A stretch of DNA of 63,993 bases, the filler included, from Octopus bimaculoides (lineage: Eukaryota), in the NCBI RefSeq assembly GCF_001194135.2. It is 5 parts of 5 records of this genome, joined end to end, with 100 filler letters (N's around TTAATTAATTAA, not from the genome) between each part and the next. Parts side by side here need not be neighbours in the genome. Positions count along the whole stretch, not along the records: positions 16,478 to 33,071 come from NC_069009.1; positions 33,172 to 42,068 come from NC_068988.1; 3 more parts are not named here. One strand, written 5' to 3'. The notes beneath the pieces are model-generated. The model was not told the origin of the DNA. It saw nothing but the letters and a program-made list of their open reading frames with translations, and did no database searches. A program made the position numbers and the translations under genes. Below are positions 32,842 through 35,200 of this stretch, one piece after another; within the stretch, counting starts at the first letter, position 1; every line of letters begins with the position of its first letter.

Positions 32842-33619
32842 TACCTGTGGTAAATCATTTCCCAAAAACTGTACTTTATCTAGTCTCGAACATTTTCATA
32901 CATGAGAGAAGCCATATCATTGTGACATGTAGCAAATGATTTACTTATAAAAGCAGCTTAACTACTCACAAGAGCATCCACATGACAGACAAACCATTCC
33001 AGTGATCCGTCATCGTTCTTTTCAAGAGCAAAGGAACGCTCCTCAGTAAACAACTCCAGACTTGTTTTTTTNNNNNNNNNNNNNNNNNNNNNNNNNNNNN
33101 NNNNNNNNNNNNNNNTTAATTAATTAANNNNNNNNNNNNNNNNNNNNNNNNNNNNNNNNNNNNNNNNNNNNAACAAATAGTAAATGAGTATATGCATATA
33201 TACGTACAGGTATGTGCATACCGACATCCACCTGTATGTATAGGTGCATATCTGGGTACAGGACATTGCAAACAAAACAGAGACGAGAAAACACACAAGC
33301 CACATAGAGAACATTCTACTTCATCAGCTACCTCCGTTTTAACACCGGCGTTTCGAAGAGCTAGGCAGGACGCATCGTTAAAACAGCTCTTCCCATGGAC
33401 CGCAAATTAAATTTGTATACACAAATTAAATCTTGCCATGGAGGAATGTCGTCTCGGACAAAAAACAAGACAGGAAAACAAACAGAAAAGGATTTACGGC
33501 CAGACGAGAAAAATTGTTTGTGTGTGAACGCTCGTACGTACGTATGTATATATGTATGTATGTATGTATGTATTTCTGTATGTAATATGTAAACAATTCT
33601 CATTTTCTTCTATCTGCAG

Positions 33620-33755
33620 ACGCTTAGCTAAATCCATTTCCATACTCATCCCACTCTTTACCGTGCATTTGATTTTTATATTTCAACCTGATGAAGTATC
33701 CGGGATACCTGAAATCGTCCTCCTTGCGCTTGAAATGTTGTTGAGTTCATTTCAG
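33620..33755 (+). CDS. Class B (secretin-family) GPCR exon, TM6-ECL3-TM7
   Basis: cag|A CGC..TTT CAG|gtgag; RLAKSISILIPLFTVH..LEMLLSSFQ versus canonical RLAKSTLLLIPLFGVH..LGSFQ. Confidence 0.9.
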
Positions 33756-34149
33756 GTGAGTTGAAGCATCGTGTTTTTTTGTTTCTGAATCTTGCCGTAG
33801 TTTCTTTTTCAGTATTTCATATTCTAACATTATTCATGTTTTATCACTAATACCTAGTTTTAAAATTTAATTTCAAAATTTGATATTCACTGCGATTAAT
33901 TTATTGTTATCACAAATATTGAAAAAAATACATATGAGAGTGTGCATATATAGGTGTGTGTATACGTACGATTTCTTCAATGCCACATTGAGTTTGATGC
34001 GTTGTTCTATCGTTTTGGTTTTATCGAAGTGGATAAAGAAATATTTTAGATAGAATTGGTACAGAATCCAACAGCGACAATATTATGAACAAGAAGGCAC
34101 ATATCTAAAAGTAGGTCACCAGGAATGTATTTCCATGTGTTCATCATTA

Positions 34150-34920
34150 CATTATTCTTAAAACCCAGAAGTAAAACATCCAGTTTTACCCAAAATGTAA
34201 ATTGGTAAAAACCAACAAAAATGAATTGGGCTTAATTTGCAAACAAATACTCGACTTTATTAATCTTGAAATTTGATATGCCACTTGGTTAGTTCAATTG
34301 TATTGCAATGCTGCAGTTATAAAGTCGTTCAGATATATACAGGCAAAAATAACTGTAGATTTACCCAATTTGATGTACCTATCTATATATAAAACTTTTC
34401 TTCTAAAGGCCTTGGAATATGGGAAAAATTTGACCACTACCAACGACACTGACGTTAGTATCATTATGAATACCAGAAAGAAGGTTTTATTTCAAGATGA
34501 TTCCCATGGTGTCAAAAGGTGTGGGACAAACTTGTGTCTAAGTCCCGATGTGAAGCTGTGATGAAGTTGAGATATCAACTAAGCAACCTCTTCATTTTAG
34601 ATATTATTAACAAACGCAGGGGACAGAATGTATAGAAATGAAGATGTAACTTCCCATTGCATCATTAATGTACATTGCTTGAATAAGTTTCGAAAGGAAA
34701 CACTAAGCATATATAAGAATAATAACCTGAAAATTACTATTAGCACCACCTATTCCAAATGAGTTCACAAGATACAAAAATGATAACAGTCCATCCACTC
34801 TGCAACCTTTATAAAATGTATTATTGACGAAATATGTAGGGAAATCCAAACTATCCTCTCAGAGATACATTTTCTGTGCAATAAAATATCTTACTAGGGC
34901 AATTCTTTCAAACTAACAAG
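34150..34920 (+). mobile_element. Degenerate Penelope-like RT remnant in the GPCR intron
   Basis: Frameshifted motifs PKCKLVKPTKNELG, CRFTQFDV and LLKALEYGK..IIMNTRKKVLF match the PLE pattern CRLINPAKSELG / FIQFDI..YPSI. Confidence 0.7.
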
Positions 34921-34949
34921 ACCAAAAAAAGAAATATATAAAGTATGCT

Positions 34950-35200
34950 ACGATATTTGAAGCGTAAGGAGGAAGATTTCAGGTTTCCCCATTACTTTAT
35001 CATGTTGAAATATAAAAATCAAACGCATGATAAAGAGTGGATGATATGGAAATGGATTTAGCTAAGCATTTACAGGTAAAAGAAAATAAGGATTGTTTAC
35101 ACATACATACATACATACATACATACATACAAGCATACATACCTACATACATACATACATACATACATACATACATACATACATACATACATACATACAG
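34950..35200 (-). pseudogene. Inverted degenerate copy of the GPCR TM6-TM7 exon with its upstream intron flank
   Basis: Reverse complement aligns to 33585-33740 at ~84% with two 1-nt gaps; acceptor CAG changed to TAA; shares the (TATG)n flank. Confidence 0.9.

What the first reader, a model, noticed from the sequence alone, without database searches (positions are those of the whole stretch)
33585..35200. Inverted copy of a GPCR coding exon in the next intron: candidate built-in A-to-I editing or splicing guide
Seen: a ~84% identical, ~150-bp inverted duplicate of the acceptor plus most of the TM6-ECL3 exon lies ~1.2 kb downstream, with its own splice site destroyed. The pre-mRNA can therefore fold the exon into a long imperfect duplex. 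Known: ADAR recoding uses intronic exon-complementary sequences, and coleoids recode massively. Inference: exon inversion is a one-step route to a new editing-complementary sequence, or to exon skipping, targeting the receptor's activation helix.
Basis: partly seen in the sequence, partly recalled or inferred. Interest (0 to 1): 0.72.

Follow-up and report, generated by a model that had tools for sequence, protein, structure and literature searches.

The report
Decaying inverted exon copy in intron
A cephalopod hormone-receptor gene carries, 1.2 kb into the next intron, a dead backwards copy of one of its own exons that could fold the pre-mRNA into a long double strand, but it looks like a lineage-specific, neutrally decaying duplication, not a proven RNA-editing or splicing guide.

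Summary
A segment of about 208 nt lies inverted 1.2 kb downstream, at 35154-34950. It contains a (TGTA)n microsatellite, the last 34 nt of the upstream intron, the acceptor, and the first ~122 nt of a 136-nt exon. Identity is 86% (blastn 149 nt, E=8e-45).

The exon (33620-33755) encodes TM6-ECL3-TM7 start of a class-B1 (secretin-like) GPCR. The next two exons are also in the piece. dN/dS is 0.27 against Argonauta.

The copy is a dead pseudo-exon: acceptor CAG changed to TAA, a 2-nt deletion, and stop codons.

Folding predicts a duplex of about 180 bp that buries the polypyrimidine tract, the acceptor and 110 of 136 exon bases. The ddG is -146 kcal/mol, against -16±5 for shuffles.

The orthologous loci of Argonauta hians and Sepia pharaonis lack the copy. 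It arose about one third of the way back to the Argonauta split. Nearly all mismatches are changes in the copy, including CpG decay. Wobble-preserving changes show no excess, so nothing indicates selection for pairing.

No transcript data could be reached, so editing and exon skipping remain untested.

Best reading: a neutral inverted micro-duplication that is probably an incidental ADAR hyper-editing substrate. An adaptive "built-in guide" is possible but unsupported, at about 0.12.

The parts
33534..33585 (+). (TGTA)n microsatellite M1 in the upstream intron. It is the outer end of the duplicated segment and pairs with (TACA)n M2.
   Evidence: 43/51 identical to the reverse complement of 35105-35154. 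28 M1:M2 pairs in the 4-kb fold.
33586..33619 (+). 3' end of the upstream intron: polypyrimidine tract and CAG acceptor (AG = 33618-33619). It lies inside the predicted duplex.
   Evidence: Sequence read. 27/34 identical to the copy. Mean probability of pairing with the copy arm 0.85.
33620..33755 (+). Exon A, 136 nt, entered in phase 2. It encodes (R)RLAKSISILIPLFTVHLIFIFQPDEVSGIPEIVLLALEMLLSSFQ, i.e. TM6, ECL3 and the first half of TM7 of a class-B1 GPCR. Its donor is CAG|GTGAGT.
   Evidence: (7tm_2, 23.7 bits against a cutoff of 20.6). Orthologous exons in Argonauta (L001:9887-10021) and Sepia (L002:25764-25898). dN/dS 0.29.
33742..34949 (+). 1208-nt spacer, the loop of the predicted hairpin. 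It contains the exon's last 14 nt and its 5' splice site (33756).
   Evidence: No similarity to the Argonauta or Sepia introns.
34950..35069 (-). Inverted pseudo-exon: a reverse-complement copy of exon A positions 33620-33741. It has a 2-nt deletion and stop codons in all frames.
   Evidence: 102/115 identical.
35070..35104 (-). Inverted copy of the intron 3' end. The acceptor is destroyed (CAG became TAA).
35105..35200 (-). (TACA)n microsatellite M2, the inverted counterpart of M1, expanded. It can also pair with M3.
   Evidence: (I1: 97 nt, 89% with 37223-37319).
36848..36889 (+). Exon B, 42 nt, encoding GLVIAILLCFANYE (second half of TM7). It shows that the copy lies in intron A-B (33756-36847).
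   Evidence: Argonauta L001:11409-11450 and Sepia L002:30538-30579.
37868..38203 (+). Exon C, the last coding exon: VKTELARFW... (helix 8 and C-terminal tail), 111 codons plus the stop at 38201-38203.
37187..37320 (+). (TGTA)n microsatellite M3 in intron B-C. It competes for pairing with M2.
   Evidence: 65 M2:M3 pairs in the 4-kb MFE.

Best explanation
This is a lineage-specific inverted micro-duplication. About 208 bp of the gene was copied in reverse orientation 1.2 kb downstream, into the next intron. The copied segment holds a (TGTA)n microsatellite, the last 34 nt of the upstream intron, the acceptor, and the first ~122 nt of the TM6-ECL3-TM7 exon of a class-B1 GPCR. The likely cause is a fold-back or template-switch event with one breakpoint in the microsatellite; this step is inferred.

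The copy is a dead pseudo-exon. It has since drifted at about the neutral rate, while the real exon stayed under purifying selection; this is shown.

Both arms lie in one pre-mRNA. They are predicted to form an imperfect duplex of about 180 bp that encloses the polypyrimidine tract, the acceptor and about 80% of the exon; this is shown in silico.

In ADAR-rich coleoid tissue the most likely consequence is incidental, clustered (hyper-)editing of both arms before the intron is removed. That could include low-level recoding of TM6/ECL3 codons. This step is inferred, and there is no evidence that the element was selected as a guide.
For: The repeat is real and far from chance.

The copy includes this gene's own intron sequence, so it arose as a DNA-level local duplication and not from mRNA or a distant paralogue. 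No other part of the gene is duplicated in the piece.

It is absent from the orthologous loci of Argonauta (10 kb either side of the 132-aa C-terminal gene model) and Sepia.

The copy shares 20 exon-part states with the window's exon that differ from Argonauta, so it arose after that split.

In the 4-way alignment, 21 of 26 mismatches are copy-side changes, 1 is exon-side and 4 are unresolved. The changes include CpG to TpG/CpA. In the pairwise alignment, 6 of 14 transitions are wobble-preserving. Both patterns fit neutral decay.

Copy divergence is about 0.15. Total dS to Argonauta is about 0.9, or about 0.45 per lineage. The age is therefore roughly one third of the time since the split (inference).

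The gene is functional: dN/dS 0.27 and canonical splice sites.

Duplex prediction: 181 pairs in the MFE; 110 of 136 exon bases paired; P 0.87; ddG -146 against -16±4.7 kcal/mol. The arms alone fold weakly, at -18 and -28 kcal/mol. 135 exon-to-copy pairs persist in a 4-kb context.

The pair meets the operational dsRNA criterion of a published editome survey: reverse-complement alignment of at least 80% identity and at least 50 nt within ±2 kb (PMC9989829).

In Octopus vulgaris most A-to-I editing lies in introns and 3' UTRs, where hairpins are common (PMC9699675).
Against: There are no RNA data, so editing is inferred only from structure.

The acceptor and the exon are transcribed about 1.2 kb before the copy. 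Spliceosome assembly, exon definition or RNA-binding proteins may therefore pre-empt the duplex.

Neutral decay cannot be told apart from weak selection with a single species carrying the copy.

A ~0.15 substitutions/site-old inverted repeat that still pairs this well could reflect some constraint.

The fold-back mechanism of origin is not demonstrable from one locus.
Confidence: 0.55

Rival explanations
1. Adaptive editing-complementary sequence. The inverted copy is maintained because it directs ADAR to particular adenosines of the TM6/ECL3 exon and so tunes receptor activation. The best a priori site is A33667, the only exonic A opposite a C, which would give CAU to CIU (His to Arg at the conserved TM6 histidine).
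For: The duplex covers 29 of the exon's 32 adenosines, 20 of them recoding if edited (3 more lie beyond 33741). There is a single exonic A:C mismatch, at 33667, flanked by 5-bp and 20-bp helices. A:C mismatches favour ADAR (general knowledge). Class-B GPCR gene models of O. bimaculoides carry high-level recoding sites (Table S5 of PMC9989829). Intron-exon pairing has been largely ignored in cephalopod editing-structure studies (PMC8891338). ECS elements 1-2 kb into the downstream intron are known for GluK1/GluK2 Q/R editing (from memory).
Against: The copy is absent from Argonauta and Sepia. Mismatches accumulate on the copy side with no excess of pairing-preserving changes and no compensatory change. 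The one exon-side change, at 33650, breaks a pair. The A:C mismatch is 1 of 13 exonic mismatches and arose by an ordinary transition in the copy. A long near-continuous duplex predicts promiscuous rather than selective editing. None of the published class-B recoding sites could be mapped to this exon.
Confidence: 0.12
2. Splicing modulator. By burying the polypyrimidine tract and acceptor, or by ADAR editing of the AG or branch site, the duplex causes skipping of exon A. Skipping 136 nt shifts the frame, with a stop in exon B, and would yield a receptor truncated before TM6. Alternatively, the M1:M2 pairing across the exon promotes back-splicing into a circRNA.
For: The acceptor region pairs with the copy with probability 0.85. 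The arms bracket the exon's 5' splice site in a 1.2-kb loop. Skipping would put TGA in frame within exon B (read from the sequences). Splice variants of the TM6/TM7 exons are known in vertebrate class-B receptors (from memory).
Against: Both splice sites of exon A are strong consensus sites. The copy is transcribed after the acceptor and donor. In O. vulgaris, editing very rarely alters splice sites and circRNAs are at low levels overall (PMC9699675). For back-splicing the acceptor must be accessible, but here it lies inside the duplex.
Confidence: 0.08
3. Inert relic. The duplex never forms to a meaningful extent in vivo, because of co-transcriptional splicing, protein coating or helicases. 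The copy then has no molecular consequence at all.
For: The transcription order and the 1.2-kb separation. The neutral-looking decay of the copy. No conservation outside the lineage.
Against: The predicted ddG of -146 kcal/mol is very large and the arms have only weak competing local structure. Comparable intronic inverted repeats are the main ADAR substrates across animals (PMC9989829). Octopus introns are typically long and slowly removed (general knowledge).
Confidence: 0.2
4. Assembly artefact. The inverted copy was created by, or misplaced in, a gap-rich short-read assembly.
For: The piece contains three N gaps and many microsatellites.
Against: The arms differ by 14% plus indels, with a CpG-decay pattern. 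Artefactual or haplotypic duplicates would be nearly identical. No gap lies between the arms. The 1.2-kb spacer is unique sequence.
Confidence: 0.03

Closest known systems
Intronic editing-site complementary sequences (ECS) of ADAR recoding targets: GluA2 Q/R and R/G, GluK1/GluK2 Q/R (ECS about 1.9 kb into the intron), 5-HT2C receptor exon 5/intron 5, and insect Syt1 and para
   Same: A downstream intronic sequence is complementary to a coding exon of a neuronal membrane receptor. It lies in the same pre-mRNA at a comparable distance (about 1.2 kb). The duplex is imperfect and includes an A:C mismatch.
   Different: Known ECS elements are short to moderate, evolutionarily conserved, and shown to be needed for site-selective editing. 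This one is about 200 bp, is a plain inverted copy of the exon plus its upstream intron end, is absent from two other cephalopods, decays like neutral DNA, and has no editing data.
Long inverted-repeat dsRNAs in introns and UTRs, such as inverted Alu or SINE pairs, which are hyper-edited by ADAR
   Same: Two arms of at least 80% identity and more than 50 nt lie within 2 kb in one transcript. A long, nearly continuous duplex is expected, and so is clustered promiscuous editing.
   Different: The arms are not transposable-element copies. One arm is a functional coding exon with its acceptor, so any hyper-editing would hit codons and a splice site.
Fold-back or template-switch inverted duplications (FoSTeS/MMBIR-type local rearrangements) and partial-gene pseudo-exons
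   Same: A short local inverted duplicate with a spacer. One breakpoint lies in a microsatellite. The copy is non-functional and decaying.
   Different: The mechanism is inferred from anatomy only. No junction microhomology could be resolved, because the outer junction lies inside the repeat tract.
Complementary intronic sequences that loop out exons: circRNA-promoting inverted repeats, and the docking/selector pairings of mutually exclusive splicing
   Same: M1/M2 and M2/M3 microsatellite pairings bracket exon A and exon B respectively and compete for M2.
   Different: Here the pairing continues through the acceptor and the exon itself. No alternative exons are involved, and there is no junction evidence.

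Membership tests
Class-B1 (secretin-like) GPCR gene | Match to Pfam 7tm_2 above the gathering score | tested here: met
   23.7 bits against a cutoff of 20.6, profile positions 202-250 of 250. Only the C-terminal end of the domain lies in the piece.
Class-B1 (secretin-like) GPCR gene | TM6-TM7-helix 8 sequence similarity to solved class-B1 receptors, including the TM7 'SFQG...LxCFxNxEV' motif | tested here: met
   GHRHR, VIP1R, PAC1R, GCGR, GLP1R and PTH1R at E from 7e-13 to 1e-10 over query residues 1-72. The motif is visible in the printed alignments.
Class-B1 (secretin-like) GPCR gene | TM6 P-x-x-G kink motif | tested here: not met
   The window and Argonauta have PLFT. Sepia has PLFG. This is an octopod-lineage substitution and does not by itself exclude membership.
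Class-B1 (secretin-like) GPCR gene | N-terminal hormone-receptor (HRM) domain and TM1-TM5 | not testable with these tools
   The upstream exons lie outside the piece, which starts at 33172.
ADAR editing-site complementary sequence (ECS) | Intronic sequence complementary to the exon, in the same pre-mRNA, predicted to pair with it | tested here: met
ADAR editing-site complementary sequence (ECS) | A-to-I editing observed at the paired exon positions | not testable with these tools
   No transcript or read data were reachable. The protein database holds no Octopus orthologue. Exact look-ups of window ORFs found nothing. Published class-B recoding sites could not be mapped here.
ADAR editing-site complementary sequence (ECS) | Evolutionary conservation of the intronic element, or covariation that keeps pairing | tested here: not met
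   Absent in Argonauta and Sepia. 21 of 26 mismatches are copy-side and there is no compensatory change; 6 of 14 transitions are wobble-preserving. Conservation among closer octopods could not be tested.
ADAR editing-site complementary sequence (ECS) | Editing depends on the element (deletion or mutagenesis) | not testable with these tools
   This needs an experiment.
Hyper-editing inverted-repeat dsRNA substrate | Reverse-complement alignment of at least 80% identity and at least 50 nt within ±2 kb (criterion of PMC9989829) | tested here: met
   149 nt at 85.9%, 1.2 kb apart. The criterion was read.
Hyper-editing inverted-repeat dsRNA substrate | Arms derived from interspersed repeats | tested here: not met
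   One arm is the orthologous, conserved coding exon. The other is its local copy. Only the outer ends are microsatellite.
Hyper-editing inverted-repeat dsRNA substrate | Clusters of A-to-G mismatches on both arms in RNA | not testable with these tools
   No RNA data.
circRNA-promoting flanking inverted repeats | Complementary sequences in both flanking introns, with the exon's splice sites left free | tested here: not met
   The upstream arm is only partly intronic (M1 plus 34 nt), and the pairing runs through the acceptor and 110 exon bases.
Assembly or haplotype duplication artefact | Near-identical copies, often next to gaps | tested here: not met
   86% identity with indels and no gap between the arms.

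The most novel reading that the evidence does not exclude
The inverted exon copy is a newborn editing-complementary sequence, created in one mutational step in the Octopus lineage. It brings recoding, for example His to Arg at the conserved TM6 histidine or I-to-V/M and K-to-R/E changes, to the activation helix of a class-B neuropeptide receptor. Species that lack the copy (Argonauta, Sepia) would not edit this exon. It would then be a natural before-and-after experiment on how coleoid recoding sites originate from exon-intron pairing.
Probability: 0.12. Interest if true: 0.7.

Novelty: new member of a known kind. Interest (0 to 1): 0.35.

Why it matters
If RNA data showed editing of this exon only in species that carry the copy, it would document a one-step birth of an editing-complementary sequence by local exon inversion. 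It would also show that intron-exon pairing contributes to coleoid recoding. Published structure analyses admit they have largely ignored that contribution (PMC8891338). As it stands, the locus is a well-defined, cheaply testable case with built-in negative controls (Argonauta and Sepia). The evidence in hand points to an ordinary neutral rearrangement whose dsRNA potential is a by-product.

Tried and rejected
(1) Closer relatives. The protein search with the 170-aa C-terminus returned only Argonauta hians and Acanthosepion (Sepia) pharaonis, with no Octopus proteins. Presence of the copy in sister species therefore could not be tested.

(2) Independent assemblies or transcripts. Exact look-ups of ten window ORFs in the 15-billion-protein collection found none. 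This gave no route to other contigs.

(3) Published editing sites. The Liscovitch-Brauer 2017 paper is not held. Table S5 of PMC9989829, truncated as stored, lists recoding sites in three O. bimaculoides class-B gene models. A codon-pattern scan found no place in the piece that fits them, and manual placement on exon A's ATA and AGT codons gave no sensible CDS start. That table also excludes hyper-edited clusters, so absence from it says little.

(4) A larger inverted paralogue. tblastn with the Sepia protein found only the exon-A-derived piece in reverse. Rejected.

(5) A known RNA family at either arm. Rfam gave only sub-threshold, microsatellite-driven miRNA-like hits. Rejected.

(6) A TE-borne copy. 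No TE protein signal lies near the copy. The only TE domain found is a DDE_3 remnant 5 kb downstream, beyond the gene's stop codon. Multi-copy status in the genome could not be tested.

(7) Literature precedent for exon-derived ECS. Two searches found none.

Full report
**The gene**

The usable piece (33172-42068) carries the 3' end of a gene on the + strand.
- Exon A is 33620-33755: acceptor CTGCAG|A, donor CAG|GTGAGT, 136 nt.
- Exon B is 36848-36889: 42 nt, encoding GLVIAILLCFANYE.
- Exon C is 37868-38203: VKTELARFW... through the stop codon.

The joined peptide matches Pfam 7tm_2 above its gathering score. It aligns over TM6, TM7 and helix 8 with solved GHRH, VIP1, PAC1, glucagon, GLP-1 and PTH1 receptors at E about 1e-12. 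The only relatives in the protein collection are from Argonauta hians (named GLP-1 receptor by its source) and Acanthosepion pharaonis. The organism is therefore a cephalopod. Exon nucleotide identity to Argonauta is 79-81%. Against Argonauta, dN/dS is 0.27 with dS about 0.9 over 170 codons. The gene is under purifying selection.

**The repeat**

The repeat finder reports a 91-nt ungapped inverted pair, 33651-33741 against 34950-35040, at 85%. A gapped alignment extends it to 33534-33741 against 35154-34950, with 200 columns at 86% identity. blastn gives 149 nt at 85.9%, E=8e-45, in an 8.9-kb target.

It holds a (TGTA)n microsatellite, the last 34 nt of the upstream intron with the polypyrimidine tract and acceptor, and the first ~122 nt of exon A. 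Homology stops about 14 nt before the donor on one side and inside the microsatellite on the other.

The copy is dead. Its acceptor CAG is now TAA, it has a 2-nt deletion, and it has stop codons in every frame. The copy contains this gene's own intron sequence, so it is a DNA-level local duplication. No other part of the gene is duplicated in the piece.

The arms differ by 14% plus indels, and no assembly gap lies between them. An assembly artefact is therefore very unlikely.

**Predicted RNA structure**

- The MFE fold of 33500-35230 pairs the two arms over 181 bp. 110 of 136 exon bases are paired with the copy, and the longest uninterrupted helices are 23, 20 and 20 bp.
- Without the microsatellites, the arms gain -146 kcal/mol on pairing. 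One hundred dinucleotide shuffles give -16±4.7. Each arm alone folds weakly.
- In the ensemble, the mean probability of pairing with the copy is 0.85 for the acceptor region and 0.87 for the exon.
- In a 4-kb context the exon-to-copy duplex persists with 135 pairs. The outer part of the (TACA)n tract switches to a third microsatellite in the next intron.

**Evolution**

The orthologous loci were fetched. In Argonauta (L001) exon A is at 9887-10021 and the intron is 1.4 kb. In Sepia (L002) exon A is at 25764-25898 and the intron is 4.6 kb. Neither locus holds any inverted copy of its exon, by the repeat finder or by sensitive blastn.

A four-way alignment polarises the differences.
- The copy shares 20 exon-part states with the window's exon that differ from Argonauta. 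The duplication therefore post-dates that split.
- Of 26 exon/copy mismatches, 21 are changes in the copy, 1 is a change in the exon, and 4 are unresolved.
- The single exon-side change, a synonymous T to C at 33650, breaks a pair.

In the pairwise alignment, the changes include CpG to TpG/CpA. Of 14 transitions, only 6 keep a G-U wobble, which is about chance.

Copy divergence is about 0.15 and per-lineage dS is about 0.45. This places the event roughly one third of the way back to the Argonauta split (inference). That is old enough to be shared by related octopodids, which could not be checked.

Nothing here indicates selection to keep pairing. With only one carrier species, weak selection cannot be excluded.

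**Function**

No transcript evidence was reachable. A published O. bimaculoides table lists high-level recoding in secretin-receptor-like and 7tm_2 gene models. Class-B receptors are therefore edited in octopus. None of those sites maps to this piece, and that table excludes hyper-edited clusters by design.

The literature read here says three relevant things.
- In octopus most A-to-I editing lies in introns and 3' UTRs, where hairpins are common. Editing rarely alters splice sites, and circRNAs are at low levels (PMC9699675).
- Many apparent recoding sites across animals lie in hyper-editing clusters of long dsRNA (PMC9989829).
- Cephalopod structure analyses have largely ignored introns (PMC8891338).

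The present pair meets the operational dsRNA criterion used in PMC9989829. If edited, 22 of the exon's 32 adenosines would recode. The only exonic A opposite a C is 33667, the middle base of the conserved TM6 histidine codon.

**Verdict**

The dsRNA potential is strongly supported.

The best-supported reading is a lineage-specific, neutrally decaying inverted micro-duplication that is probably an incidental ADAR substrate (0.55). The rivals are:
- an inert relic (0.20);
- an adaptive ECS (0.12);
- a splicing or circRNA modulator (0.08);
- an assembly artefact (0.03).

It works like the long intronic inverted repeats that ADAR hyper-edits. It resembles classical ECS elements in geometry. It fails the one ECS criterion that could be tested here, conservation or covariation. 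The decisive tests are RNA-against-gDNA calls on both arms, and presence or absence of the copy across octopods. Both need data these tools do not reach.

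Noticed in passing
window 35098-35200, 36848-36889, 37187-37320: The 42-nt TM7 exon (exon B) is bracketed by complementary microsatellites, (TACA)n upstream and (TGTA)n downstream. They pair over 65 bp in the 4-kb MFE fold, and the same (TACA)n tract also pairs with the (TGTA)n tract upstream of exon A. The two loop-outs therefore compete for one tract. Skipping of the homologous 42-nt exon is known in vertebrate class-B receptors (from memory).
   Followed up: partly
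window 33651-33662; L001:9917-9928; P0002: The class-B TM6 kink motif P-x-x-G reads PLFT in the window and in Argonauta, but PLFG in Sepia. The conserved glycine was apparently replaced in the octopod lineage.
   Followed up: partly
window 33620-33755 against 36848-36889 and 37868-38200: Synonymous divergence from Argonauta is lower in exon A (dS 0.50; 11 of 31 synonymous sites) than in exon C (1.09) or exon B (1.9). The numbers are small. Argonauta lacks the copy, so the inverted copy cannot explain this.
   Followed up: no
window 39615-40520 (+): A broken Tc1/mariner-type transposase remnant lies about 1.4 kb downstream of the receptor's stop codon. Pfam DDE_3 matches at E=7e-9 on 40165-40407, and neighbouring ORFs are in other frames.
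   Followed up: partly
window 41413-42068 (-): A G+C-rich stretch next to an assembly gap carries a 157-aa ORF (41481-41951, minus strand) and overlapping ORFs. There is no Pfam match even at E up to 5. It looks like a retroelement fragment by eye, but this is unconfirmed.
   Followed up: partly
window 37124-37186, 39114-39598, 40548-41412: There are three runs of N (assembly gaps). The first two are flanked by TA/CA/TGTA microsatellites, so repeat lengths there are not trustworthy.
   Followed up: no
Literature: Table S5 of PMC9989829 (O. bimaculoides scaffolds KQ415811 and KQ417054): Secretin-receptor-like and 7tm_2 gene models of O. bimaculoides carry high-level recoding sites: Y14C at 0.43, R36G at 0.57, I24M at 0.57, and S22G at 0.23. 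None could be placed on this piece.
   Followed up: yes
window 33188-33584, 35133-35209, 37183-37315, 38895-39117: Rfam E-value scan: all matches lie in microsatellite or simple-repeat tracts, are to miRNA precursor families (mir-297, mir-466, mir-3149, mir-1277 among others), and all fall far below gathering scores. They are compositional matches and not genes.
   Followed up: yes
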